Virus record (IMG/VR): IMGVR_UViG_3300042473_001540
Coordinates: 1-64,000 of that record
Length of the DNA stretch: 64,000 nucleotides
Reading direction: 5' to 3' (one strand)
Part shown: piece after piece, positions 12,701 through 47,949 of the stretch
How the letters are laid out: the number at the start of each line of letters is the position of its first letter
How positions within the stretch are numbered: position 1 is the stretch's first letter
Notes under the pieces: generated by a model
Database searches by the model: none
Seen by the model: the letters and a program-made list of their open reading frames with translations, nothing else
What the model was told of the DNA's origin: nothing
Made by a program: the position numbers and the translations under genes

Positions 12701-12838
12701 CACTCGTGGGATCCCCCACCTTTGGTATTGGTCCACTGCTTCTTGCAGAAAGCTGACGATATTTCCTTCAAAATATAGAGTTGTTAAGCTTACGCCTGTT
12801 GCATACAGGCGCTATAATTTTTAGGAATGGGAAATCAA

Positions 12839-13513
12839 ATGATTCAATACATTGAAATACGCCAAGCTGAGGGCGGAGAAGACAGTCAACTGTTTGTTGA
12901 TGATTTGGCACGTGCCTATATTCGCATGGCCAGCAAGCTGGGTTGACTCACTACTGTAGTTAAAACGGTCCCAGGCTTCTGTGTTATCAAACTAGAGGGA
13001 CAAGATCTTTCACAGTGGGCACAAGAAGCAGGTGGGCATAGGATACAGAGGGTTCCACCAACTGAAAGACGTGGAAGAGTCCATACCAGTACAGTCACAG
13101 TAGCAGTGCTAGAGTATCCTTCAGAACAAGCCATTGAAATACTTGACAAAGATCTAGTAATAGAGTGGTTTTCTGGCACTGGTCCCGGTGGTCAAAATCG
13201 AAATAAGGTAATGGCCAGTTGTAGATTGCGACACACACCAACTGGGGTAGTCGTTACCGCCCAAACAAGAAGCAGAACCACTAGCTTTGCACAAGCTAGG
13301 CAGGAATTGGAGACACGACTTCAAAACAGGTTCAAGAGCCAAGCAGCCTCTCAAACCAGCCAAGAAAGAAAACATCAGGTTGGTAGCGGCCAGCGCGGAG
13401 ATAAAATACGCACTATCCAAATTCAACATGACTCAGCTGTGGACCATCGCACAGGCAAACGTTGCACTGCGGAAAGTTATCTCAAAGGCGAAATTTACAA
13501 GCTTTGGTTGTGA
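12839..13513 (+). CDS. RF1-like class I peptide release factor lacking domain 1, with in-frame TGA at 12944-12946
   Basis: IEIRQAEGGEDSQLF...KLG*...EAGGHRIQRVPPTERRGRVHTSTVTVAV, GPGGQNRNK, GSGQRGDKIRT all in one frame. Confidence 0.85.
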
Positions 13514-25024: not shown

Positions 25025-25133
25025 TTGCCATCGAGGTTGGAACAGCCTCCCAACACACCATGAGAATGGTAACTAGCCGGCAGCAATCACCTAGCTGGTG
25101 AAGAAATCCGGAAGTGGCATCCGGCGATGGCGA
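25025..25133 (+). ncRNA. Candidate multibranch RNA
   Basis: TTGCCATCG/CGATGGCGA closing stem with four internal hairpins. Confidence 0.45.
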
Positions 25134-32316: not shown

Positions 32317-32922
32317 TTACCATCTTGCATTATCCTCAAATCCAGCATCTTCTAGTTCTTTTTGACAATCAAACATGGCACGTTTGCCTTGTCCTGCGTA
32401 TTTGTTCAAGATTGTTTCAACAGTCGTGTGATTCATTGCTGACCGCAACGAGATACTTTTGGCTGCCAAACAACGGAGCAGTGGAAGAGTAGGCGTGTAA
32501 GGTATAGCCAAGTAATTGAGCTCTGAAGGCATACCTTGGAGTGAGGTTAATGGGTTGAGGTGACAACTAAAAAGATCACCAACACTGCTGGGAGCACCTT
32601 CCAGTGAAGTCAGTTGGTTGTTGAAGCATACGAAACTTCCAACCACATTCTTGGGTGCAGCTTTAAGTGAAATAAGTTGGTTACTTGAGCCTAAGAAACT
32701 TCCACCAACACTCTCTGGCGCCCCGTCCAGTGTGGTTAGTTGGTTGTAATCGCACTGGAAGTGTCCAAGAACACTCTTGAAACGCACAGGGAACTGGGGT
32801 AATTGTCTTTTAAGTATAACATTACCCTGGCAAGTGATCAACCCCTCAGGATCTATTGTGACTTGGCCTGTTGTTTTGAAATTAGCTTTCAACAAAGCCA
32901 TTACTTCTTTTTTGTCTACCAT
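32317..32922 (-). CDS. LRR-like cassette protein 9
   Basis: LRR-like repeats plus conserved C-terminal block. Confidence 0.85.
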   Translation of the reverse strand: MVDKKEVMALLKANFKTTGQVTIDPEGLITCQGNVILKRQLPQFPVRFKSVLGHFQCDYNQLTTLDGAPESVGGSFLGSSNQLISLKAAPKNVVGSFVCFNNQLTSLEGAPSSVGDLFSCHLNPLTSLQGMPSELNYLAIPYTPTLPLLRCLAAKSISLRSAMNHTTVETILNKYAGQGKRAMFDCQKELEDAGFEDNARW

Positions 32923-33668
32923 CTTGCATTCCCTTCAAATCCAGCATCTTCCAGTTCTTTTTGGCAGTCAAACATGGCACGTTTGCCTTGACCCATATAC
33001 TTTTGCAGAATAGCCCGCACCTCGTGTGGCCATCCCATACCCGACCACAGTTTTTTAGCATTTAAACAACGCAAGAGCGGCAGAGTGGGGCTGTAGTCAA
33101 TCCATAAAACCCTTACTTCAGTAGGCATTCCTTCAAGTGACTCTAGCTGATTACCCCATGCTCTCAACTCGCCAGTGATGGTTTTTGGTGCACCGTGTAG
33201 TGAGACTAGTTTGTTTTCCATGCAAAACAAATCATGCACTTTCTCAGGAACATGTTCCAGTGATGAGAGTTGATTTGTCATACAAGAGAAATTGGCACCA
33301 ACTGATTTGGGACAGTGTTCAAGGCTTTCTATGTTGTTATTATCGCATTTGAAATCTCCGCCCACATGTTGAGGCGAACCCAACAAACTGGTGAGTTGGT
33401 TGTGGCCACACTTGAAATCTCTACCTACCCAAGAGGGTGCGCCTTCTAGACTCACCAGATCGGTATGCTGTACAGCAAAATCGTAGCGTATTTTTCCAAA
33501 CCTTACCCGCAAGGTTTTTATACCTGGCTTACCATCAAGGTAAGATTTCTCCTTGCTCTTGACACTGCCTGTGCAGGATATCAATCCTGTGTTGGGATCA
33601 ACAGAGAGTTTACCTGTGTGAGAGTAATATTTGTCAAAAGTTTTTTTGATCCCGGCTAGATCTACCAT
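32916..33668 (-). CDS. LRR-like cassette protein 8
   Basis: Same; 7-nt ATGGTAG start/stop overlap. Confidence 0.85.
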   Translation of the reverse strand: MVDLAGIKKTFDKYYSHTGKLSVDPNTGLISCTGSVKSKEKSYLDGKPGIKTLRVRFGKIRYDFAVQHTDLVSLEGAPSWVGRDFKCGHNQLTSLLGSPQHVGGDFKCDNNNIESLEHCPKSVGANFSCMTNQLSSLEHVPEKVHDLFCMENKLVSLHGAPKTITGELRAWGNQLESLEGMPTEVRVLWIDYSPTLPLLRCLNAKKLWSGMGWPHEVRAILQKYMGQGKRAMFDCQKELEDAGFEGNARW

Positions 33669-34279
33669 CGTGCATTTCCTTCAAATCCAGAGTCTTCCAA
33701 ATCTTTTTGGCAGTCAAACATGGCAGCTTTGCCTTGACCTGCATATTTGTTCATGATTTCTTGAACCTTCTGGGGTGGCTCCGATTCATCAACCCTATGC
33801 ATGAATACAATTTTTTTGGCAACCAATGCACGTAGCAAAGGCAAAGTGGGCGAATATTGTAACACTAGTCGCCCTAAACCTTCTTGCGGTATGCCTTCAA
33901 GACTTTCAAGTGGATTGCCCACACAACTCAAAGATCCAAGAACTTTTTTGGGTGCACCTTGCAAGCTCTTGAGCTGGTTGAACCCACATAAGTAGTGTTC
34001 GCCAACAGCATCAGGACCGCCTTCAAGAGTTTGTAAATTGTTCTCAGTACAACGAAATTCATTGTAGACATATTTGGGAGATCCTTGAAGGCTTGTGAGC
34101 CCCATGCCCCCCACATCAAATCCTTCCACTTCATAAAAGCCAACTGGCAACTTCTTAACATGCAACATAAGCGTTACGTAACCTTTTGTGCTTATTGTTC
34201 CATCAGAATTGATTACAATGCTTTCATTACATTGAAAATAATCATCAAAAGTTTTTTTGATGTTATCAACGTCTACCAT
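33662..34279 (-). CDS. LRR-like cassette protein 7
   Basis: Same. Confidence 0.85.
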   Translation of the reverse strand: MVDVDNIKKTFDDYFQCNESIVINSDGTISTKGYVTLMLHVKKLPVGFYEVEGFDVGGMGLTSLQGSPKYVYNEFRCTENNLQTLEGGPDAVGEHYLCGFNQLKSLQGAPKKVLGSLSCVGNPLESLEGIPQEGLGRLVLQYSPTLPLLRALVAKKIVFMHRVDESEPPQKVQEIMNKYAGQGKAAMFDCQKDLEDSGFEGNARW

Positions 34280-34911
34280 TTTGCATGATCCTCAAATCCA
34301 GCGTCTTCCAAATCTTTTTGGCAATCAAACATGGCACGTTTGCCTTGGCCAGCATATTTGTTCAAAATTGTCTGCACTTTTCCCTTCTCCACAGTGTGAG
34401 TGTCGTCAGCAGGCTCTAAAAATATATGCCTTGCTGCCAAGGTACGTAAGAGAGGCAAATGTGGTAGATACGGTAACCAAGCTGCATTTTCCACTTTCAA
34501 CGGAAATCCATCCAAGCTTTTCAACGGATTACCAATGCAATTGAAATTATTGGGTATCTGGACAGGTGCCCCCTTCAAATCAACAAGTTGATTATGGTCA
34601 CAGTAGTAGTTCCAACCTACAATTTCTGGCCCCCCACTAAGGCTTTTGAGCATGTTACGTGAACAGTCAAAACTCACGCCCACTTCAGGGGGACAGCCTT
34701 CCAAGGTTACTAGTGCGTTCTCATCTAACGATAGATTTTCAGTTACAGCTTTGAAGGCAACTGGCAGTTTTTCAAAACGTGTATAGTGGAGATTCAACAA
34801 TTGAATATCGCCATTTACTGTTACCAGTCCATCTGATGAAACTTTTGCACTGTTGTAGTCAAAGCTGAAATGGTCTTTCAATAACTGCAAGATTTCTCGT
34901 TTGTTTACCAT
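34273..34911 (-). CDS. LRR-like cassette protein 6
   Basis: Same. Confidence 0.85.
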   Translation of the reverse strand: MVNKREILQLLKDHFSFDYNSAKVSSDGLVTVNGDIQLLNLHYTRFEKLPVAFKAVTENLSLDENALVTLEGCPPEVGVSFDCSRNMLKSLSGGPEIVGWNYYCDHNQLVDLKGAPVQIPNNFNCIGNPLKSLDGFPLKVENAAWLPYLPHLPLLRTLAARHIFLEPADDTHTVEKGKVQTILNKYAGQGKRAMFDCQKDLEDAGFEDHAKW

Positions 34912-35564
34912 CTGGCGTTGTCCTCAAATCCGGCATCTTCCAATTCTTTTTGACAATCAAACATAACACGTTTTCCTTGCCCCAAATATTTTTCCAAAAT
35001 GTATAACACCTTCCAGGCATCGCTGCCCTCGCTTTGATACGGCCAAAAAATAATCTCTGGTGCCACCAATGTGCGCAACAAAGGCAGCTGAGTATCATAA
35101 GTGATATACAAACTATCTCCAATTTTTTGAGGAAAGCCCTGCAAGCTCTCTAGAGGATTGGCTGAACAATTGAACACACTGGGGATTTCTCTAGGTGCCC
35201 CTTCCAAATCCTTCAATTGATTTTTACTGCAATTATAACTGCCGCCAAATGTGGGTGTTTGTGTCGTGCCTATTGTTTTGGGTCCAAACTTCAAACTTTT
35301 GAGTTCATTATTGTCACACTCAAAATTCTTACCAACAGTTTCTGGACAACCCTCTAGTGTCTTGAGTTGGTTGATGCTGAGCATCATACTGCCTTCAATG
35401 TGAGAAAATTTCACCGGTAGTTCTTGAAAAGAACTGTGAAATTTGTTGTATAACACAACGTCTCCCATGACACTGACTTTGCCAGCTGGATCAACAATGG
35501 GGTCCCCATCTACCATGAAATGTTGAGTTAGCGTGTTCAACACATGCTGTTTGACGTCTACCAT
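34905..35564 (-). CDS. LRR-like cassette protein 5
   Basis: Same. Confidence 0.85.
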   Translation of the reverse strand: MVDVKQHVLNTLTQHFMVDGDPIVDPAGKVSVMGDVVLYNKFHSSFQELPVKFSHIEGSMMLSINQLKTLEGCPETVGKNFECDNNELKSLKFGPKTIGTTQTPTFGGSYNCSKNQLKDLEGAPREIPSVFNCSANPLESLQGFPQKIGDSLYITYDTQLPLLRTLVAPEIIFWPYQSEGSDAWKVLYILEKYLGQGKRVMFDCQKELEDAGFEDNARW

Positions 35565-36163
35565 CTTGCATTTCCTTCAAAGCCCGCATCTTCCAGTTCT
35601 TTTTGGCAATCAAACAGGGCACGTTTGCCTTGTCCTGCGTATTTGTAAAATATTCCTTCAATTGTTAGAAGTTTGCTTTGCATAACATTGTGGGCATACA
35701 GCATTAGGCCCTGTTGGCAGTTCAAAGCTCGAAGCAAGGGCAATTTATTGTGATAATTTATGCTCAAGTGTTGGCCTACTCGTTGGGGAAACCCAGCAAG
35801 ACTCAACACTGGAACCTCTTGTCTAAATCCCACACGACCTGAAACCTCAAGGGGCCCACCTGTCATGTCTTTCAAAGGATTTTTGTTGGCAGTGAATCTG
35901 CCTCCCACAATCTGCGGACAACCTTCAAGACTGGAGAGTCCACATCTGTCTAAAATCAAACTGGCATGGCAAACGCCAAATTTTACAGGCAGTTTTCCAT
36001 TGGGAAACGGTCCTTGTATGGCCAAGAGCACACCATATCCTGGTGTGATCTCCTGCACATTTACTATACCACTATCTTCAATTTGAAAGCGCACCCGGTT
36101 GTCTGCCTCACCATTACGAAAATAAGTGTTCAACATGTGCTGAACTTCTTGTTTGTCTACCAT
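35558..36163 (-). CDS. LRR-like cassette protein 4
   Basis: Same. Confidence 0.85.
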   Translation of the reverse strand: MVDKQEVQHMLNTYFRNGEADNRVRFQIEDSGIVNVQEITPGYGVLLAIQGPFPNGKLPVKFGVCHASLILDRCGLSSLEGCPQIVGGRFTANKNPLKDMTGGPLEVSGRVGFRQEVPVLSLAGFPQRVGQHLSINYHNKLPLLRALNCQQGLMLYAHNVMQSKLLTIEGIFYKYAGQGKRALFDCQKELEDAGFEGNARW

Positions 36164-36756
36164 CTTGCATTTCCTTCAAATCCAGCATCCTCTAGATCTT
36201 TTTGACATTCAAACAGGGCACGCTTGCCCTGTCCTTTGTATTTTTCAATTATTTCTTCAATGGGATTAGTGTTAAAGGATGATGAGCTCAATATTACACC
36301 ATCTTGGCAAGCTAACGTGCGCAGCAGCGGCAACTTGTCATGGTAAGGCAGTTTAGCATAGTCACCCACCCTATCAGGAAAACCATCCAAACTCTCTAAT
36401 AGGTTTTTCTGCATCCCAAGCCAAAACCTACCTGTGACTTCTTTGGGCCCACCCTTGAAATTTTTCAATTGATTGCCAAGTGCAACAAAATTGCCTTGGA
36501 TTACAGGGGGACAACCAACCAAGTCCACGATTTGATTCCGGTCCAATTTTAAGCTGGCTTTGAACAAGCCAAATCTCACAGGCAACTGACCTCCAGGGAA
36601 GGGTTTGTCCTTAATAGTGCGGAGATGGCCGCGACCAGGAGTCAGCTCAAGCACATTAACCAAGCCCTCAGGACCTATGTCAAATTTCACAGCGTCATTT
36701 GGCTCAAAGAAAAAATACTCTGCCAACAGTTCCAAAATTTCCCTTTTGTCTACCAT
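36157..36756 (-). CDS. LRR-like cassette protein 3
   Basis: Same. Confidence 0.85.
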   Translation of the reverse strand: MVDKREILELLAEYFFFEPNDAVKFDIGPEGLVNVLELTPGRGHLRTIKDKPFPGGQLPVRFGLFKASLKLDRNQIVDLVGCPPVIQGNFVALGNQLKNFKGGPKEVTGRFWLGMQKNLLESLDGFPDRVGDYAKLPYHDKLPLLRTLACQDGVILSSSSFNTNPIEEIIEKYKGQGKRALFECQKDLEDAGFEGNARW

Positions 36757-37571
36757 TTGGCGTTCCTTTCAAATCCTGCGTCTTCCAATTCTTTTTGACA
36801 GTCAAACAGGGCTCGTTTGCCCTGGCCTGCGTATTTTTTCAAGATGGTTTCCACTTGAATATACTTGCCCCACAGCACAGGCCAAAAATTGACCTTCTGG
36901 GCTACCAAAAGCCGTAACAAGGGCAAATCGGATTTGTAACTGACTTCAATCAAATCAGGAGTTTGGGAGCCTAACCCCTCAAGATTTTCCAAGGGATTGT
37001 GATCAAAAATAAACTGCTTGGAAATATTCAAAGAGGCACCTTTGAGTGTTGTGAGCTTGTTGTTGGTTGCCCAAAAATATTCCACGGTCTGTGGTGCGTC
37101 TTGAAGATCAGTCAAGAGATTTTTACTGACATCAAACATACCACCTATTTGCAGGGGAGCACCTCGCAAACTCACTAAATTGTTGTTGTATGCAATGTAT
37201 TCTTGTGTAAAGTCTCGTGGACTTCCCAACAAATCTGAGAGTTTATTATTCTGGCAAGAATATTGTCCTTTTACTGTTTTTGGGCCACCAACCAAGCTGA
37301 TCAACTGGTTTTCACTGCAATCAAATGTGTCCAAGACAGTGTGAGGACAGCCTTCAAGTGTTTCCAACTTGTTCCTGTGACAGAGAAAATTGCCTTCCAC
37401 CACTCCAAATCTCACAGGCAATCGAGAGGTCTCTTTGCTCAACAAAATTGATCCATGAGCATCTACAACACCTGTATCATGTATAGTGAAAAGGGTACTT
37501 TCCCAACCAAAGTATTCATTCAGTAACTGACGAACAGTTGTTTTGTCTTGTGGGAATTCCTGGTTTACCAT
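36750..37571 (-). CDS. LRR-like cassette protein 2
   Basis: Same; longest member. Confidence 0.85.
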   Translation of the reverse strand: MVNQEFPQDKTTVRQLLNEYFGWESTLFTIHDTGVVDAHGSILLSKETSRLPVRFGVVEGNFLCHRNKLETLEGCPHTVLDTFDCSENQLISLVGGPKTVKGQYSCQNNKLSDLLGSPRDFTQEYIAYNNNLVSLRGAPLQIGGMFDVSKNLLTDLQDAPQTVEYFWATNNKLTTLKGASLNISKQFIFDHNPLENLEGLGSQTPDLIEVSYKSDLPLLRLLVAQKVNFWPVLWGKYIQVETILKKYAGQGKRALFDCQKELEDAGFERNAKW

Positions 37572-38221
37572 CGTGCATTTTCCTCAAAACCCGCATCTTC
37601 CAATTCTTTTTGGCAGTCAAACAAAGCACGTTTGCCTTTGCCTGCATAACTGTTCAAAATTTTATGTAACTGCTGGAATTTTCCTTCGTTTCCTCGCTTA
37701 TATTGCATAGGCACAATAAGGTCCACATGCAAGGCTCCTAATGTTCTCAACAGTGGTATTGTGGGACTATACGTCAATGTTACCCAAGCAATGCTCTTGG
37801 GCAAGTGGTCAAGTGACTCCAGTGGGTTGTCTTGAATCTCCAGATTGTCAGATACTGTGTCCGGCAAACCTTGTAGAGAAGTCAACTTGTTGCTATTGAG
37901 AAGGATACTGCCACTGACCCAATGCGGAAAACTGGTTAACTTTGATAGCAAGTTGAAGCTGGCGTCGAAATCTCCTTCAATCTCAAATGGGCATCCTTCC
38001 AAGGTTCTTAGATTCTTGTTGTTGCAGGTGAAGGTACCATGCACCTTACTGAAACGCAAAGGTAACTGAGATTGAGGCCGCGTTAGGTGTAAGTCACCAG
38101 CCACAACAATCTTACCATCTTGATCAAACATCCAACCAGCTGGATATAAGGCATTGCTCTCTATCTTGAAGTTCTGGCTCAAGATGGTTTTGGTTTGTTC
38201 ATATTCCACATCACTTACCAT
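37565..38221 (-). CDS. LRR-like cassette protein 1
   Basis: Same. Confidence 0.85.
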   Translation of the reverse strand: MVSDVEYEQTKTILSQNFKIESNALYPAGWMFDQDGKIVVAGDLHLTRPQSQLPLRFSKVHGTFTCNNKNLRTLEGCPFEIEGDFDASFNLLSKLTSFPHWVSGSILLNSNKLTSLQGLPDTVSDNLEIQDNPLESLDHLPKSIAWVTLTYSPTIPLLRTLGALHVDLIVPMQYKRGNEGKFQQLHKILNSYAGKGKRALFDCQKELEDAGFEENARW

Positions 38222-38988: not shown

Positions 38989-39010
38989 ACTTTTAAGACT
39001 TGTACCATGT

Positions 39011-39084
39011 GGCCCTGTATCCCAATTGGCAGAGGAGACAGACTTAAAATCTGTTAGTTGAGGGTTCGAATCCCTCTGGGGCCA
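39011..39084 (+). tRNA. tRNA-Leu(TAA), short variable loop
   Basis: ACAGA-CTTAAAA-TCTGT; TTCGAAT. Confidence 0.85.
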
Positions 39085-39183
39085 TATTCCCTTATAGGAT
39101 AGGTTCTCCGGTTCGGAGATTATATTTTTCAATTATTTTCCCTGTTATTGTGTATGTCTTGGAACACCAGCTATAATTCCTAT

Positions 39184-39908: not shown

Positions 39909-39994
39909 GCGGCGTTAGCTCAGGGGTTAGAGCACAAGTCTTCCAAACTTGAGGCGAATAGGTTCCATCGGTTCGAATCCGATACGCCGCTCCA
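39909..39994 (+). tRNA. tRNA-Gly(TCC), enlarged variable region
   Basis: CAAGT-CTTCCAA-ACTTG; U73; CCA. Confidence 0.85.
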
Positions 39995-40124: not shown

Positions 40125-40248
40125 GGATCCGTGGTCTAATTGGATAAGGCAAGAGCCTTCCGGTCCCGCAGGTAGCATTCAAGGTTCGAATCCTTGGGGA
40201 CCGCTCCTAAGCTCTTCGATGGGGGTTCGAATCCCTCCGGGTCCGCCA
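40125..40248 (+). tRNA. tRNA-Arg (probably TCT) with 47-nt tRNA-mimic insertion in anticodon
   Basis: GGATCCG/CGGGTCC-GCCA; AGAGC/GCTCT stem; two TTCGAAT T arms. Confidence 0.8.
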
Positions 40249-42501: not shown

Positions 42502-43881
42502 TTGAGTTACAAAGGTAAAATTGTTATTTTGGGATTTGGCAGCATTGGCAGTGGACTTTTACCATTGTTGCTCAAACATTTTCAGCCGGAAAAGATTTTA
42601 GTTATTGGTGCTGATGACCGAAACATCAACATCTCCGCCAAATACAGTGTGGCTCACATTATTGAGCCAGTGCTTCCTGGTAATTATCAAAGTGTGCTGG
42701 CTCGCTATACTCAACCGGGTGATTTTTTGGTCAATCTCAGTGTAAATGTGAGTAGCAAGGCCCTAGTTGAGTGGTGCCAACTGAACCAAGTTCTCTACCA
42801 AGACACTTGTATTGAGCCCTGGGAAGGTTTTTATACTGACACAAGCCTTCCAGTAGAGCGTAGGAGCAATTATGCACTACGCCAAGAGATGTTGGACTAC
42901 AGAGCCAACCTGCCCAACGGAAACAAAGGCCCTACAGCCATTATGGCACACGGTGCCAATCCAGGCCTAGTGAATCATTTTGTGAAGCGTGCGCTTTTGA
43001 ACATTGCATACAAACTGGGAAGCAACCTAAACCCAAAAACACGAGCTGATTGGACCACTCTCTCCCAAACACTGGGCTTGAAAGTGATCCACATTGCTGA
43101 ACGCGATACTCAAACTCCCAAGAGTCCAAAAGCTCGCGGCGAGTTTGTGAACACCTGGAGTGTGGATGGCTTTGTGAGTGAGGGCTTGCAACCCAGTGAG
43201 TTGGGCTGGGGAACTCATGAGAAAAGTTTACCCCAGGATGCCCAACGTTTCAGCTTTGGTTGTCAGTCTGCGATCTACTTGAACCGACCAGGTTGTGTTA
43301 CCAAGGTACGGAGTTGGACACCTGGCGAAGGGGCGTATCAAGGTTGGTTGGTAACACACAATGAAAGCATCAGCATCTCTGACTACTTCAGCAACAGTGA
43401 GTATCGTCCCACAGTGCATTACGCATATCATCCCTGTGACTCAGCAGTAATGAGCATGCACGAGCTGGCTGGCAAAAACTACACTCAACAAACCTCTCAA
43501 AGACTCATTGTGGATGAAGTAGAAAGTGGGGTAGATGAGCTGGGGGTGTTGCTCATGGGAACATTTGGGGCCTATTGGTATGGCAGCCATCTCAGCATTC
43601 AAGAGGCAAGGAAACTGGCTCCCCACAACAATGCCACAAGCTTGCAAGTGGTGGCACCAGTGCTGGCAGGAATTTTGTGGGCCATTGAGCATCCCAATGA
43701 GGGCATCCTGGAAGCTGATGAGCTGCCTTTCCAAGAGATTACCAAGGTCACTGATCCCTATATGGGAAATTTGGTTGGCGCCTACACAAACTGGACTCCA
43801 CTGGAGGATCGCGGACTTTTGTTTCCGGAAGAGGTTGACTCAAGTGATCCTTGGCAGTTCCTAAACTTTAGAGTCAGTTGA
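42502..43881 (+). CDS. hss: Homospermidine synthase
   Basis: GFGSIG, HGANPG, HIAERD, NTWSVDGF, HNE, NATSLQV, DPWQF. Confidence 0.93.
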   Translation: MSYKGKIVILGFGSIGSGLLPLLLKHFQPEKILVIGADDRNINISAKYSVAHIIEPVLPGNYQSVLARYTQPGDFLVNLSVNVSSKALVEWCQLNQVLYQDTCIEPWEGFYTDTSLPVERRSNYALRQEMLDYRANLPNGNKGPTAIMAHGANPGLVNHFVKRALLNIAYKLGSNLNPKTRADWTTLSQTLGLKVIHIAERDTQTPKSPKARGEFVNTWSVDGFVSEGLQPSELGWGTHEKSLPQDAQRFSFGCQSAIYLNRPGCVTKVRSWTPGEGAYQGWLVTHNESISISDYFSNSEYRPTVHYAYHPCDSAVMSMHELAGKNYTQQTSQRLIVDEVESGVDELGVLLMGTFGAYWYGSHLSIQEARKLAPHNNATSLQVVAPVLAGILWAIEHPNEGILEADELPFQEITKVTDPYMGNLVGAYTNWTPLEDRGLLFPEEVDSSDPWQFLNFRVS

Positions 43882-43926
43882 CAGACAGCCAATGCATGTT
43901 ATGCTCTATTATTAGAGGAGTAGCAG

Positions 43927-44727
43927 ATGCATTGGATTATTCAGGACAACCTGCTCAATGAGCGCAACTATAGCAGCCTTCTGGAAGCTCTAGTTCGTCT
44001 TCAAATCCCTCATGACATTGTCAAGGTGATTCCGTTCACAAGTGGGTTGCCATGGGAAGAGCGAATTACTCCCCTGGTAGACCCTCAAGGACACGTGATG
44101 GTGAGTGGGAGCATCAGCCTGGCTACACTGGCTACTGATCGTGGTTGGACCCCAGGCAGCTTTCACAATGAGAACCATGACTTTCAAGTGTGGCGTGAAC
44201 ACATGAAAGGTCATCTCCTCAATGAGGAGGCAGTGGTGTGCAAGTTTGGTGATGTGCCCCATTTGTGGGATCGCTTTTTTATCCGACCCACAGAAGACAC
44301 CAAGAGCTTCAACGGGCAGATAATAGACTGGCAGGCGTTCCTATCTTGGCAACGTAAGGTGATTGGATTGCGTGAGACCTATACTACTCTTGATGAGAAC
44401 ACTCCAGTTGTGGTGAGTGAACTCAAACAGATATATCGGGAGGCCCGATTTTTTGTAGTAGATGGAGAAGTCATCACAGGCAGCACCTACAAGATTGGAA
44501 GCCGCGTTTGTCCAACAGCAGAAGTGCCACCCACAATGTGGGAATATGCTCAACGCATGGCTGGAAAGTGGGGACCAGCTCGAGCCTATGTGATTGACCT
44601 GGCTCTTACTGACGATGCTGATGATGGATACAACAAGATTATTGAATACAACTGCTGCAATTGTGCAGGGTTTTATGAGATTGATGTGCAGAAATGGATT
44701 ATGGCCATTGAAAACATGGAGTTTTAG
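43927..44727 (+). CDS. ATP-grasp domain protein (DUF4343-like)
   Basis: FIRPTEDTKSFNG, EARFFVVDG, YVIDLA, IIEYN. Confidence 0.7.
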   Translation: MHWIIQDNLLNERNYSSLLEALVRLQIPHDIVKVIPFTSGLPWEERITPLVDPQGHVMVSGSISLATLATDRGWTPGSFHNENHDFQVWREHMKGHLLNEEAVVCKFGDVPHLWDRFFIRPTEDTKSFNGQIIDWQAFLSWQRKVIGLRETYTTLDENTPVVVSELKQIYREARFFVVDGEVITGSTYKIGSRVCPTAEVPPTMWEYAQRMAGKWGPARAYVIDLALTDDADDGYNKIIEYNCCNCAGFYEIDVQKWIMAIENMEF

Positions 44728-45336
44728 GTGTTCAAGTTGCTGGCCAAGTTGCCTCGAGAACTGGGGGTAGCGTGTAGCGGTGGTGTAGACAGCATGGCGG
44801 TGCTGGATTTTTTGCGCCTCCGGCACAACGTCACTGTGTGTTTTTTTCATCATGACACCGAAACAAGTTCAAAAGCGTTGAGCTTTCTCAGCACATACTG
44901 TTATGAGAACTCCATTCCCATGCGAGTGGATTTTTTGGTTGATGCGTGCCCCAAAGGGGTTTCAATGGAAGAACATTGGCGCAACAGTCGATATGAGTTT
45001 TTGCACAGCATCGAAGGAGTTGTGGTAACAGGGCATCATCTAGATGATTGTGTGGAGACCTATCTCTTCAACTGTTTGCATGGGAAAACACACACCATTC
45101 CCATGTGGCGGAACAATGTGGTGCGACCCTTTCTCACCACACCCAAGAGTGTGTTTGAAAGTTGGTGTGTGAGACATGAGGTGCCTTGGGTTGAGGATGA
45201 GAGCAATAAAGATTTGAAGTATATGCGGAATCACATTCGTCATAAGATTGTACCGGAGGCACTCAAGGTCAATCCAGGCTTGAGGAAGGTGGTCAAGCGG
45301 CTGGTTCTTCAAAGCATGCAAACAGAAAATAGTTGA
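44728..45336 (+). CDS. tilS: tRNA(Ile)-lysidine synthetase (catalytic domain only)
   Basis: SGGVDS PP-loop, GHHLDDCVET, VRPFL, EDESN, RNHIRH. Confidence 0.9.
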   Translation: MFKLLAKLPRELGVACSGGVDSMAVLDFLRLRHNVTVCFFHHDTETSSKALSFLSTYCYENSIPMRVDFLVDACPKGVSMEEHWRNSRYEFLHSIEGVVVTGHHLDDCVETYLFNCLHGKTHTIPMWRNNVVRPFLTTPKSVFESWCVRHEVPWVEDESNKDLKYMRNHIRHKIVPEALKVNPGLRKVVKRLVLQSMQTENS

Positions 45337-45376
45337 CAGACTGCGATTTAGCGCATATTATATGAGCAGTTGATAA

Positions 45377-45450
45377 GGACGCATAGCTCAATTGGTTAGA
45401 GTCGGCCGCTCATAACGGTCTTGTTCCAGGTTCGAGCCCTGGTGTGTCCA
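45377..45450 (+). tRNA. tRNA-Ile2(CAT)
   Basis: GGCCG-CTCATAA-CGGTC; adjacent to tilS. Confidence 0.8.
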
Positions 45451-46715: not shown

Positions 46716-47156
46716 TTGATCGTTGTGCTCAACACGCCACACAGTCCATTAGCCGAGCTCATCCTGGGAGATCCTGTTCGACCTCATATTCCAATTGAAA
46801 CTCGATTCACCAATGGCGAAGTTTGGATGCTGTGCAATGAGCAAGATGATGTTGCGGCTGTGTTGTGTGTAAGTTGGCAGGATTTTGTGCCCGAGAGTGA
46901 AAGTGAGTTGTTCCAATGCAGTGGAGTGAGCCCAAGTGTGGCTGTGTTTTACACGGTGTGGAGTCTCTCACCAGGCGCCGGGCAAAAGATGATCCAGGAA
47001 GCGCAAAAACGTTTGAAACACGCTTATCCACATATTCAGCGTGCAGTAACACTCAGTCCGCCCACAGCTATGGCACGCAAGTTTCATCTCCGGAATGGGG
47101 CATTTGAATTGCAAGTAAATTCCACAACTGTGAATTTTGAATACGCCCTCTCTTGA
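46716..47156 (+). CDS. Hypothetical protein (possible GNAT-like fold)
   Basis: FYTVWS..GAG, TLSP..MARKFHLRNGA. Confidence 0.55.
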   Translation: MIVVLNTPHSPLAELILGDPVRPHIPIETRFTNGEVWMLCNEQDDVAAVLCVSWQDFVPESESELFQCSGVSPSVAVFYTVWSLSPGAGQKMIQEAQKRLKHAYPHIQRAVTLSPPTAMARKFHLRNGAFELQVNSTTVNFEYALS

Positions 47157-47192
47157 CGTTGTGTTTCGAGTCTGCTATACAATGTCTAGTAC

Positions 47193-47266
47193 GGCCCCAT
47201 AAGACAAAGGTAGTCAGCTGGACTCTAAATCCAGTGGTGTGAGTTCAAATCTCACTGGTGCCACCA
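47193..47266 (+). tRNA. Amber suppressor tRNA (CTA)
   Basis: CTGGA-CTCTAAA-TCCAG; TTCAAAT; ACCA; own TTGACG-17-TATACA promoter. Confidence 0.85.
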
Positions 47267-47400
47267 AAAGTTTACAAAAAGGTTTTCAAACAAAATAATG
47301 ACCTAGGTTTCACACAAGTTTGAACTTTTCTTTGACCCGCAAGCGGCCTCTGTGCCCTTGCGGGTTTCTTCATATCAACTCAACAAGAAGGAACAAAAAC

Positions 47401-47949
47401 ATGACTGAGATTTTCTGCGAAGAAATTGTCTTCCATTTTAACAAAAAGAACTTGGAAGATCCCGCTGTACCAATGTGGACCTTGAAAACCAAGGGCCAGT
47501 CACTATATGTGAGCCACGTTAGTTGCGAGTGTCCTTGGACCACCAAGGAAACACCTGATAACCAATCTACTAAAGGATCAATAAAAGTTAAGAACGCACT
47601 ACTAATCATCAATGATTTCAATGAGGCAACCTTGCGACCAGCGACCTCAGCGGACAAGGCACGTTTGAAAGGAGAATGCCTGGTTAGAGTGGGCTGGTTG
47701 GGATTGGACCACAATGTGATGAAGGAGTTTTTGCAGAAGAATGAAATTGCTACCACCGAATGGAAAAATCTCCTTGGAGGATGTGGCAGCAGCTATTGGA
47801 TAACTGATGTGTTGAGCAATAGTGATGTAGTGCAGATGGAATTGGCACTTTGGGGAAAATTCAGAAGGCTACAGCCCAACGAGCCATTGTATAGAGGTTA
47901 TGATAGCGCAGGGAATGAATGGATTGACGATGATGACGAGGGCGGTTAA
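47401..47949 (+). CDS. Hypothetical phage protein
   Basis: FHFNKK...TKETPDN...KGSIK; AAGGA RBS. Confidence 0.65.
   Translation: MTEIFCEEIVFHFNKKNLEDPAVPMWTLKTKGQSLYVSHVSCECPWTTKETPDNQSTKGSIKVKNALLIINDFNEATLRPATSADKARLKGECLVRVGWLGLDHNVMKEFLQKNEIATTEWKNLLGGCGSSYWITDVLSNSDVVQMELALWGKFRRLQPNEPLYRGYDSAGNEWIDDDDEGG

What the first reader, a model, noticed from the sequence alone, without database searches (positions are those of the whole stretch)
47153..47266. Amber suppressor tRNA in a genome that is not TAG-recoded and encodes an RF1-type factor
Seen: a full cloverleaf with CTA anticodon, encoded CCA and its own promoter, yet long genes here are uninterrupted and TAG ends many ORFs, including the attenuator leader and most LRR cassettes. 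Established: TAG-recoded phages usually pair a CUA tRNA with RF2, whereas RF1 competes with it. Inference: tunable UAG readthrough, promoted by the tRNA and reversed when the UGA-gated RF1-like protein is made.
Basis: partly seen in the sequence, partly recalled or inferred. Interest (0 to 1): 0.65.

Follow-up and report, generated by a model that had tools for sequence, protein, structure and literature searches.

The report
Suppressor tRNA paired with amber-gated gene
A lake-water giant phage that uses the normal genetic code carries a real, conserved UAG-reading tRNA. Its conserved target appears to be the gene next door, which hundreds of related phage contigs place behind a deliberate UAG codon, making a natural single-gene switch.

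Summary
Window 47193-47266 is a genuine tRNA with a CUA anticodon, its own sigma-70-like promoter and a terminator. It sits in a jumbo phage that uses the standard code, where about 19% of genes end in TAG.

The interpretation needs changing. I found no conserved read-through extensions, and TAG and TAA stops swap freely between orthologues. The RF1-like gene is real: it lacks domain 1 and carries a family-wide in-frame TGA at a Trp site. But a clear copy is present in only 1 (plus 1 marginal hit) of 6 complete genomes that carry the tRNA module, so it is not an obligate partner.

The tRNA is instead linked to the gene just downstream (47401-47949).
- In 70 of 80 related viral loci, that gene starts ATG-NNN-TAG-ATT-GAA, with an in-frame amber at codon 3 to 5.
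- A CUA tRNA lies within 1.2 kb upstream in 44 of the 80.
- In the focal phage and 11 other fetched loci (about 9-10 lineages), the amber ends a 2-6 codon leader placed ahead of an intrinsic terminator.
- The frame after the TAG stays open through the whole hairpin in 12 of 12 cases, against 6 of 24 control frames.

Best reading: a suppressor tRNA plus an amber-gated gene, here wired as a read-through-sensing attenuator. The inserted amino acid and the protein's function are unknown.

The parts
47153..47181 (+). Sigma-70-like promoter of the tRNA unit: TTGACG (47153-47158), 17-nt spacer, TATACA (47176-47181)
   Evidence: Read from the sequence. The CTTGAC and TATAnA blocks are invariant in three diverged relatives while the flanks drift. 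The tool's promoter scan did not list this site, which matches 8 of 12 consensus positions, below the scan's cut of 9.
47193..47266 (+). tRNA with CUA anticodon (amber-suppressor type). A73 and CCA are encoded. A 26:44 pair extends the anticodon stem to 6 bp, leaving a 3-nt variable loop
   Evidence: ARAGORN and Rfam at 58.5 bits. Homologues sit at the same syntenic spot in several further lineages (L059-62, L053, L054/66/67, L064/65; L076 and L077). The anticodon is invariant, and there is a compensatory C3-G70 to U3-A70 change.
47298..47306 (+). Two-codon leader ORF, ATG ACC TAG, ending in the amber codon
   Evidence: ATG and TAGGTT are the only invariant block between the tRNA and the terminator in 5 lineages. 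The middle codon varies: ACC, ACT, ACA, CTA. Leaders of 2-6 codons ending in TAG occur in L076, L077, L078, L117, L153, L161 and L103. No good Shine-Dalgarno precedes it in this phage, though one does in L077, L078 and L153.
47307..47408 (+). Frame downstream of the amber codon: 33 codons open through the terminator, ending at TGA 47406-47408 just past the next gene's ATG
   Evidence: The frame is open through the whole hairpin in 12 of 12 leader-type loci, against 6 of 24 control frames. The next stop lies within 5 nt after the gene's ATG in 8 of 12 loci, and overlaps it as ATGA in four (L053, L054, L064, L117).
47336..47371 (+). Intrinsic terminator: hairpin 47336-47364 followed by TTTCTTC
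   Evidence: RNA fold. The stem is conserved with a compensatory A-U to G-C change in L064. The hairpin starts 29 nt after the UAG, beyond the reach of a ribosome stopped there. That reach is my inference from known ribosome footprints.
47401..47949 (+). Gated gene (P0001, 182 aa). It has no Pfam domain and consists of an N-terminal beta domain, a C-terminal ACT/ferredoxin-like domain and an acidic tail
   Evidence: The family has more than 130 protein clusters and relatives on 350 viral contigs. In 70 of 80 loci it carries an in-frame TAG at codon 3-5. AlphaFold gives pLDDT 86.6, with only unspecific fold matches at Z about 7.
12827..13513 (+). Context only, not an obligate partner: RF1-type release factor lacking domain 1, with an in-frame TGA at 12944-12946 at a conserved Trp position
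   Evidence: TGA sits at the same column in six diverged homologues and in database members that translate only with TGA=W, while the other Trp codons are TGG. A clear copy is present in 1 (plus 1 marginal hit) of 6 complete module-bearing genomes.

Best explanation
The tRNA is one half of a two-part 'amber gate'. The phage makes a tRNA that reads UAG, presumably charged by a host synthetase. It also places a UAG where it controls the neighbouring gene (47401-47949).

In most relatives the UAG is codon 3 of that gene, so the protein can be made only when the suppressor tRNA beats RF1.

In this phage the UAG ends a two-codon leader (47298-47306) lying 29 nt ahead of an intrinsic terminator. A ribosome that stops at the UAG leaves the hairpin free to form, and transcription from the tRNA promoter ends there. 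A ribosome that reads through runs into the hairpin, prevents termination, and stops just past the gene's ATG. Transcription, and probably coupled translation, then enters the gene.

Shown: the tRNA and its conservation, the linkage to this gene family, the invariant amber codon, the terminator, and the open frame across it.

Inferred: charging, actual read-through, antitermination, and the purpose of the gate. The purpose could be a delay or threshold switch, or feedback on suppressor activity.
For: tRNA conservation:
- The tRNA is real and under selection, with syntenic homologues in several further lineages whose flanking proteins have drifted to 55-58% identity.
- The anticodon is invariant and a stem change is compensated.

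Linkage to the gated gene family:
- Of 80 viral loci with a relative of the downstream gene, 70 start ATG-(1-3 codons)-TAG-ATT-GAA behind a good Shine-Dalgarno.
- Among the 51 distinct gated loci, the base after TAG is A in 50, and the genes themselves end in TAG only once.
- Database copies that read 'MAQIEY' translate only with TAG=Q.
- 44 of the 80 loci have a CUA tRNA within 1.2 kb upstream on the same strand, with 32 distinct sequences.
- Two complete genomes without an adjacent tRNA each hold exactly one CUA tRNA, 2.1 and 4.7 kb upstream of the gene.

Standard code in the neighbours: pooled loci and both complete genomes show no TAG recoding.

Leader type:
- Twelve loci from about nine to ten lineages have a 2-6 codon ORF ending in TAG, then a terminator.
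- The frame after TAG is open across the hairpin in 12 of 12, against 6 of 24 control frames.
- The distance from TAG to the hairpin's 3' end is 57-72 nt.

Independent case: the distant relative G002 has an unrelated CUA tRNA and, 2.6 kb downstream, two adjacent genes that start ATG-NNN-NNN-TAG-AT(C/T).
Against: - There is no RNA or protein evidence. No RNA run holds this phage.
- The leader in the focal phage lacks a recognisable Shine-Dalgarno.
- One variant (L066) has 2 extra bases that move the downstream stop.
- No alternative antiterminator structure or pause site was found.
- One control frame is also open in this phage.
- The ATG-NNN-TAGGTT block could be a protein-binding site or promoter element. 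A weak promoter-like match overlaps it.
- In the focal phage the gene has its own SD and ATG, so gating would act only through the terminator.
- The gated protein's function is unknown.
Confidence: 0.6

Rival explanations
1. The tRNA causes general, tunable read-through of UAG stops across phage (and host) genes. The UGA-gated RF1-like protein switches this off when it is made.
For: Both elements exist and are conserved. RF1 competes with CUA tRNAs by established biochemistry. G001 and G002 each carry both elements.
Against: - No coding signal or conserved length follows TAG stops.
- There is no excess of in-frame TAG junctions, and none is conserved.
- TAG and TAA swap freely between orthologues.
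- A clear RF1-like gene is found in only 1 (plus 1 marginal hit) of 6 complete module-bearing genomes.
- The two genes lie 34 kb apart here and about 140 kb apart in G002.
Confidence: 0.1
2. The tRNA is a real suppressor, but the conserved block after it is only a processing, binding or promoter element, and the hairpin merely terminates the tRNA transcript. In this phage the tRNA's targets lie elsewhere: host genes, competitors, or masking of nonsense mutations.
For: - A terminator after a tRNA gene needs no further explanation.
- The leader's Shine-Dalgarno is weak.
- A promoter-like hexamer pair overlaps the leader.
- The gene has its own SD and ATG.
Against: - Leaders vary in length and sequence across lineages but always end in TAG.
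- The frame after TAG is open through the hairpin in 12 of 12 loci.
- L078 and L117 keep the leader-terminator-gene unit without an adjacent tRNA, so the hairpin is not simply a tRNA terminator.
- The same gene family carries an in-frame TAG in 70 of 80 loci.
Confidence: 0.2
3. The phage is on the way to TAG recoding, or is already partly recoded. Its recoded genes would lie in the unassembled quarter of the genome, and the tRNA serves them.
For: - G001 is only 76% complete by CheckV's estimate.
- Suppressor tRNAs in standard-code relatives have been proposed as a step towards recoding (10.1101/2021.08.26.457843).
Against: - The portal, tail fibres, virion proteins and giant ORFs are uninterrupted.
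- TAG is not depleted, at about 19% of stops.
- GC is 45%.
- The complete relatives G006 and G009 carry the module and use the standard code.
- No RF2 gene is present.
Confidence: 0.05
4. The CUA anticodon is a recent accident in a decaying or unused tRNA gene.
For: One acceptor-stem mismatch (C4.U69) and a 3-bp D stem.
Against: - The anticodon and its loop are invariant across lineages with 55-92% flank identity.
- A stem change is compensated.
- The promoter and terminator are conserved.
- 32 distinct CUA tRNAs lie beside the same gene family.
Confidence: 0.02

Closest known systems
Suppressor tRNAs of stop-codon-recoded phages (crAss-like, Lak, Jade and others; Borges et al., 10.1101/2021.08.26.457843)
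   Same: A phage-encoded CUA tRNA is proposed to time gene expression by letting UAG-containing genes be translated only once the tRNA is available.
   Different: In those phages many late genes carry many in-frame TAGs, TAG is depleted as a stop, coding density under code 11 is low, and RF2 is the partner. Here the genome uses the standard code, about 19% of stops are TAG, and one gene (or its leader) carries one positionally fixed UAG next to the tRNA.
Leader-peptide transcription attenuators (trp, his, pheA operons; established textbook knowledge)
   Same: A short leader ORF precedes an intrinsic terminator, and the position of the ribosome decides whether the terminator forms.
   Different: The classical cases sense the supply of charged sense-codon tRNA through stalling and use alternative antiterminator hairpins. 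Here the deciding event would be reading a stop codon, the sensed tRNA is encoded on the same transcript, and no antiterminator hairpin was found. The ribosome itself would occlude the terminator.
Synthetic amber-suppressor AND gates (supD tRNA plus amber-containing T7 RNA polymerase; recalled from memory, not checked here)
   Same: Output needs both a suppressor tRNA and an mRNA with an early amber codon.
   Different: That system is engineered. This one is natural, linked in cis, and widespread in environmental phages.
Release-factor genes gated by their own recoding: the prfB +1 frameshift at an in-frame UGA (PMC12421855), and the giant-virus release-factor paper found in the search (PMC3521657; title and abstract start only, its recoding details recalled from memory)
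   Same: This bears on the RF1-like gene. An in-frame stop codon inside a release-factor gene is conserved as a control point.
   Different: In prfB the factor senses its own codon and the ribosome frameshifts. Here an RF1-type gene carries a UGA, which RF2 reads, at a Trp position, and needs in-frame read-through. The protein also lacks domain 1.
tRNA-Pyl (ARAGORN's label)
   Same: CUA anticodon. A 26:44 pair gives a 6-bp anticodon stem and a short variable loop.
   Different: It has two bases between the acceptor and D stems, G18G19, a normal T-loop and A73 rather than G73. No PylS-type core was found in 310 kb. The label is only ARAGORN's default name for a CTA anticodon.

Membership tests
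Amber-suppressor tRNA (tRNA with CUA anticodon) | Canonical cloverleaf recognised by tRNA models | tested here: met
   ARAGORN. Rfam RF00005 scores 58.5 bits against a gathering score of 29.
Amber-suppressor tRNA (tRNA with CUA anticodon) | CUA anticodon kept by selection, not by chance | tested here: met
   The anticodon is invariant in syntenic lineages, with compensatory stem changes. 32 distinct CUA tRNAs lie beside the same gene family.
Amber-suppressor tRNA (tRNA with CUA anticodon) | The tRNA is aminoacylated and inserts a residue at UAG | not testable with these tools
   No GlxRS, Trp/TyrRS, Lys/Asp/AsnRS or Phe/PylRS core is encoded in G001 or G002, so a host enzyme must charge it. 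A73 with U35 suggests Lys, or possibly Gln, by analogy with E. coli amber suppressors. That analogy is from memory and is a lead only.
TAG-recoded (code 15) phage | Low coding density under code 11 that is rescued by reading TAG as sense | tested here: not met
   Cover is 0.89-0.93 under code 11. The gain from TAG as sense is no larger than from TAA as sense.
TAG-recoded (code 15) phage | In-frame TAG in many conserved, especially late, genes, with TAG rare as a stop | tested here: not met
   No conserved in-frame TAG was found. The portal, polymerase and fibres are intact. TAG ends about 19% of genes.
Leader-peptide transcription attenuator | Short translated leader ORF upstream of the regulated gene | tested here: inconclusive
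   The ATG-NNN-TAG block is conserved with a variable middle codon. The Shine-Dalgarno is good in L077, L078 and L153 but absent in the window. Translation itself was not shown.
Leader-peptide transcription attenuator | Intrinsic terminator between the leader and the gene | tested here: met
   The hairpin at 47336-47364 plus its T-tract is conserved with covariation and present in all 12 leader-type loci.
Leader-peptide transcription attenuator | Alternative antiterminator structure | tested here: not met
   No conserved alternative pairing was found by eye or by folding. The open frame across the hairpin (12 of 12) suggests direct occlusion by the ribosome instead.
Class I release factor RF1 (prfA) | PxT tripeptide and GGQ motif, with a better match to prfA than to prfB | tested here: met
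   PPT and GGQ are present. prfA scores 186 bits, prfB 105 and PrfH 52. The best solved relatives are RF1.
Class I release factor RF1 (prfA) | Full length with domain 1, scoring above the curated family cut-off | tested here: not met
   The match starts at about residue 107 of RF1, the score is below the cut-off of 400-423 bits, and the frame is interrupted by TGA.
tRNA-Pyl | One base between acceptor and D stems, a small D-loop without GG, a PylS partner, and G73 | tested here: not met
   There are two bases (U8, A9), G18G19 is present, and the discriminator is A73. No PF01409 core was found.

The most novel reading that the evidence does not exclude
Jumbo phages that use the standard code carry a natural, cis-linked genetic AND gate or timer: a dedicated amber-suppressor tRNA plus a gene locked by a single early UAG. 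In some lineages, including this one, the lock has moved into a 2-6 codon leader ahead of a terminator. That would make a transcription attenuator whose input is stop-codon read-through, a kind of attenuator I did not find described. The widespread RF1-type factor that lacks domain 1 and is itself gated by a UGA would be a second, independent example of phages using single stop codons as regulatory sensors of the cell's termination capacity.
Probability: 0.5. Interest if true: 0.9.

Novelty: new variant of a known kind. Interest (0 to 1): 0.8.

Why it matters
Phage suppressor tRNAs have so far been read as tools for, or steps towards, whole-genome stop-codon recoding. This case suggests a simpler and apparently common use. 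One tRNA unlocks one gene in an otherwise standard-code genome, either at codon 3 or through a terminator that only a read-through ribosome can open.

If this is right, it has several consequences:
- It explains 'orphan' suppressor tRNAs in standard-code phages.
- It gives a testable model of how partial recoding could begin.
- It adds a new input, read-through of a stop codon, to the repertoire of leader-peptide attenuators.
- It offers natural orthogonal tRNA and gate parts for synthetic biology.
- It shows how gene callers mislead. Depending on the code model picked for short contigs, they hide both features: the gated gene is truncated or silently translated with TAG=Q, and the RF1-like gene is split or translated with TGA=W.

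Tried and rejected
1. Hidden recoding. Coverage profiles showed a few bins with low code-11 cover in the spliced G000/G001 sequence and in G002. In those bins several overlapping frames open at once when TGA is read through, which is a composition effect rather than recoding.
2. ATP-grasp | TAG | TilS-like junction at 44725 as a read-through fusion. Rejected: the relative G005 lacks the ATP-grasp gene and its TilS-like gene stands alone.
3. The G001 258127 TAG junction that aligned to a Trp in G002. This was an off-frame artefact of a conserved overlapping gene.
4. Conserved C-terminal extensions after the three TAG stops shared by G001 and G005. None was found; the one look-alike overlaps a convergent gene.
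5. Paralogy of the suppressor with the phage's other tRNAs. None is close.
6. An exact anticodon-arm search in IMG/VR. Outside this phage it found only chance hairpins.
7. A distant blastn search of GenBank phages. Only fragmentary tRNA matches came back.
8. A UGA suppressor hidden in the intron-like tRNA at 40125-40245. Its anticodon reads CCU or UCC, not UCA.
9. A conserved read-through structure after the RF gene's TGA. None was found, and the fourth base varies.
10. A second, reciprocal RF gene. None is present.
11. Function of the gated protein. Pfam, the Atlas, Foldseek and VIA gave nothing specific.
12. RNA evidence. No RNA run holds the phage. I did not use read laying because contigs of near-identical strains would add nothing.
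13. Amino-acid identity of the tRNA. It could not be settled.

A note on method: I read TGA as W in the RF1-like gene, and relied on TAG=Q database translations, only to read through single conserved stops. I do not claim that the genome uses another code.

Full report
**Source and context.** The window is the end of an IMG/VR virus record of 180,697 bp (G000). A longer assembly of the same phage, G001, has 309,756 bp and is 76% complete by CheckV's estimate. G001 is collinear with the window from base 1. The sequence recurs in at least 24 lake-water metagenome runs, none of them RNA. G001 encodes a portal, tail fibres, a T4-type DNA polymerase, Lon, its own RpoD-like sigma factor and 18-20 tRNAs, all within window 21.7-47.3 kb.

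**Observation.** ARAGORN and Rfam both call a tRNA with a CUA anticodon at 47193-47266.
- A TTGACG-17-TATACA promoter precedes it, though the tool's promoter scan did not list it.
- A strong hairpin with a T-tract follows it.
- No other suppressor-type tRNA (UCA or UUA anticodon) exists in the 310 kb.

**The genome uses the standard code.**
- Stop-to-stop ORF cover is 0.89-0.93 under code 11. Reading TAG as sense gains no more than reading TAA as sense.
- TAG ends about 19% of predicted genes.
- ORFs of up to 4017 aa are uninterrupted.
- In-frame junctions are equally common for all three stops.
- Extensions after TAG carry no coding signal.
- No TAG junction is conserved against the 292-kb relative G002.

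**The tRNA is under selection.** Orthologues of both flanking genes were found in diverged contigs, at 58-92% protein identity for the downstream gene. A homologous CUA tRNA sits between them every time. The anticodon loop is invariant and C3-G70 becomes U3-A70 in L053. The promoter hexamers and the terminator stem are also conserved, the stem with covariation. The distant relative G002 carries a CUA tRNA of unrelated sequence. No synthetase core that might charge the tRNA is encoded in G001 or G002.

**What it does not do.**
- Comparing G001 with the 35-kb relative G005, TAG and TAA stops swap freely. TAG became TAA in 2 of 5 single-copy genes, and TAA became TAG in 3.
- Extensions after shared TAG stops are not conserved.
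- The ATP-grasp | TAG | TilS-like junction is not a fusion.
- Backup stops are not enriched after TAG.

**The lead.** Between the tRNA and the terminator, the only invariant block is ATG-NNN-TAGGTT. The middle codon varies between ACC, ACT, ACA and CTA. This reads as a two-codon ORF ending in the codon that the adjacent tRNA decodes.

More distant homologues of the downstream protein, fetched, gave two patterns:
- **Leader type.** A short leader ending in TAG, then a terminator, then the gene (L076, L077, L078).
- **In-frame type.** The gene itself starts ATG-NNN-TAG (L079, L080).

Database proteins that begin 'MAQIEY' translate only with TAG=Q.

**Family-wide tally.** A profile scan of IMG/VR found 350 contigs with a relative, and 80 loci were examined.
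- 70 of the 80 loci have SD-ATG-(1-3 codons)-TAG-ATT-GAA in frame.
- Among the 51 distinct gated loci, TAG is codon 3 in 41, the next base is A in 50, and the gene's own stop is TAG only once.
- 44 of the 80 loci have a CUA tRNA within 1.2 kb upstream on the same strand. These are 32 distinct sequences, 27 of them with A73, and all have an encoded CCA.
- Two complete genomes without an adjacent tRNA each hold exactly one CUA tRNA, 2.1 and 4.7 kb upstream of the gated gene. Both genomes use the standard code.
- The pooled neighbourhoods (168 kb) are standard-coded.

**Leader-type loci.** There are twelve: window, L059, L053, L054, L064, L076, L077, L078, L117, L153, L161 and L103.
- The leaders are 2-6 codons long, differ in sequence, and all end in TAG.
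- The frame after TAG is open through the whole terminator in 12 of 12, against 6 of 24 control frames.
- TAG lies 57-72 nt before the 3' end of the hairpin.
- The next stop lies within 5 nt after the gene's ATG in 8 of 12 loci, and overlaps it as ATGA in four.
- L078 and L117 keep the leader-terminator-gene unit without an adjacent tRNA, so the hairpin is not merely a tRNA terminator.

In the window the hairpin begins 29 nt after the UAG. That is out of reach of a ribosome terminating there, by my inference from known ribosome footprints.

**An independent case.** G002 has two adjacent genes of other families that start ATG-NNN-NNN-TAG-AT(C/T), 2.6 kb downstream of its unrelated CUA tRNA. The principle therefore seems general in this phage group.

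**Mechanism proposed.** The tRNA promoter drives a transcript that carries the tRNA, the leader and the terminator. If the UAG is read by RF1, the dipeptide is released, the hairpin forms and transcription stops. If the tRNA reads the UAG, the ribosome translates across the hairpin, the polymerase continues, and the ribosome terminates just past the gene's ATG, which favours coupled initiation. In most relatives the same dependence is achieved directly, by placing a UAG at codon 3.

An A after UAG, and a stop very early in the ORF, are contexts that I recall as favouring suppression over release in E. coli. I did not check this here.

The purpose of the gate is unknown. It could be a delay until the tRNA accumulates, a check on translation capacity, or feedback on suppressor activity. 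The protein has an unassigned beta-rich N-terminal domain and an ACT/ferredoxin-like C-terminal domain.

**The RF1-like gene.** The gene at 12827-13513 aligns to RF1 from about residue 107 onward, so it lacks domain 1. It has PPT and GGQ motifs and an in-frame TGA where RF1 has a conserved Trp.
- TGA is at the same column in six homologues of 51-56% identity.
- It is also there in database 'full-length' proteins, which translate only with TGA=W. Their other Trp codons are TGG, and their neighbours have no internal TGA.

So the gene is a programmed, UGA-gated RF1-type factor. It would probably depend on near-cognate reading by tRNA-Trp. Two of four relatives' phage tRNA-Trp genes have 4-bp anticodon stems, a feature linked to UGA reading in PMC13092985 (abstract).

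Only one such gene exists per genome. A clear copy is present in only 1 (plus 1 marginal hit) of 6 complete genomes that carry the amber gate. I therefore treat it as a separate feature and not as the tRNA's off switch.

**Literature.**
- Borges et al. (10.1101/2021.08.26.457843) tabulated suppressor-tRNA frequencies by genetic code, standard code included, and found a standard-code relative of TGA-recoded phages that carries a TGA suppressor. They report RF2 with TAG recoding, RF1 with TGA recoding, and propose recoding as a regulator of late genes.
- Al-Shayeb et al. (PMC7162821) list RF1 and RF2 in huge phages.

I found no paper in the held library that describes an amber-at-codon-3 gene family beside a CUA tRNA, a read-through-sensing terminator, or a UGA-interrupted phage RF1. 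The library is incomplete, so this absence is weak evidence.

**Verdict.** The result is a new variant of known kinds (suppressor tRNA, leader attenuation) and is of high interest.

Noticed in passing
window 12827-13513 (+); TGA at 12944-12946: An RF1-type release factor that lacks domain 1, with a single in-frame TGA at a conserved Trp codon. The TGA is conserved across a large environmental phage family. Gene callers either split the gene or translate it with code 4. Only 3 of the roughly 95 full-length database members were checked at the DNA level. I found no description of this in the held papers.
   Followed up: partly
L025:4509-4847 and L025:4850-5431 (G002 144509-145431): In the distant relative G002, two adjacent genes of other families start ATG-NNN-NNN-TAG-AT(C/T) behind good Shine-Dalgarno sites. 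They lie 2.6 kb downstream of that phage's unrelated CUA tRNA (G002 141916-141992). G009 has a second gated ORF at 320980.
   Followed up: partly
window 42502-45450 (+): A run of four features: a saccharopine-dehydrogenase-like gene, an R2K-clade ATP-grasp gene, a TilS N-terminal-domain-only protein (120.6 bits, above the cut-off) and a tRNA with a CAU anticodon. This looks like a phage-borne lysidine tRNA-Ile2 system, perhaps with a polyamine-type twist. The ATP-grasp gene is absent in relative G005.
   Followed up: partly
window 39010-39085, 39909-39994, 40125-40245: Three odd tRNAs: a 76-nt 'Leu(UAA)' with an 8-bp acceptor stem and no long arm; a 'Gly(UCC)' with a long variable arm and U73; and a tRNA with a 50-nt insert in the anticodon loop that itself contains a T-arm-like hairpin.
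   Followed up: no
window 25026-25132 (+): Rfam match to skipping-rope RNA (44.5 bits, gathering score 36.7) inside the tRNA region.
   Followed up: no
window 32317-38221 (-): Nine tandem paralogous cassettes of about 200-270 aa, each overlapping the next by 7 nt (ATGnTAG or ATGnTAA). Six end in TAG. The one copy I tested had no Pfam hit, so the 'LRR' label is unconfirmed.
   Followed up: partly
window 46716-47156 (+): The gene upstream of the tRNA is a small GNAT-fold protein (malonyl-CoA-decarboxylase C-terminal-like). It is common in phages and syntenic with the tRNA in relatives.
   Followed up: partly
L005:2872-2948 and L009:1203-1276: Phage tRNA-Trp(CCA) genes near the RF1-like gene in two relatives have a mismatched top pair, giving a 4-bp anticodon stem. 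A 2026 NAR paper links this feature to UGA reading. The focal phage has no tRNA-Trp.
   Followed up: no
L074 (LR745206.1 47679-49159): A 635-kb huge phage also encodes a domain-1-less RF1-like protein, with two in-frame TGA codons at other positions (codons 46 and 54). Another huge phage (LR756511.1) has an uninterrupted copy.
   Followed up: no
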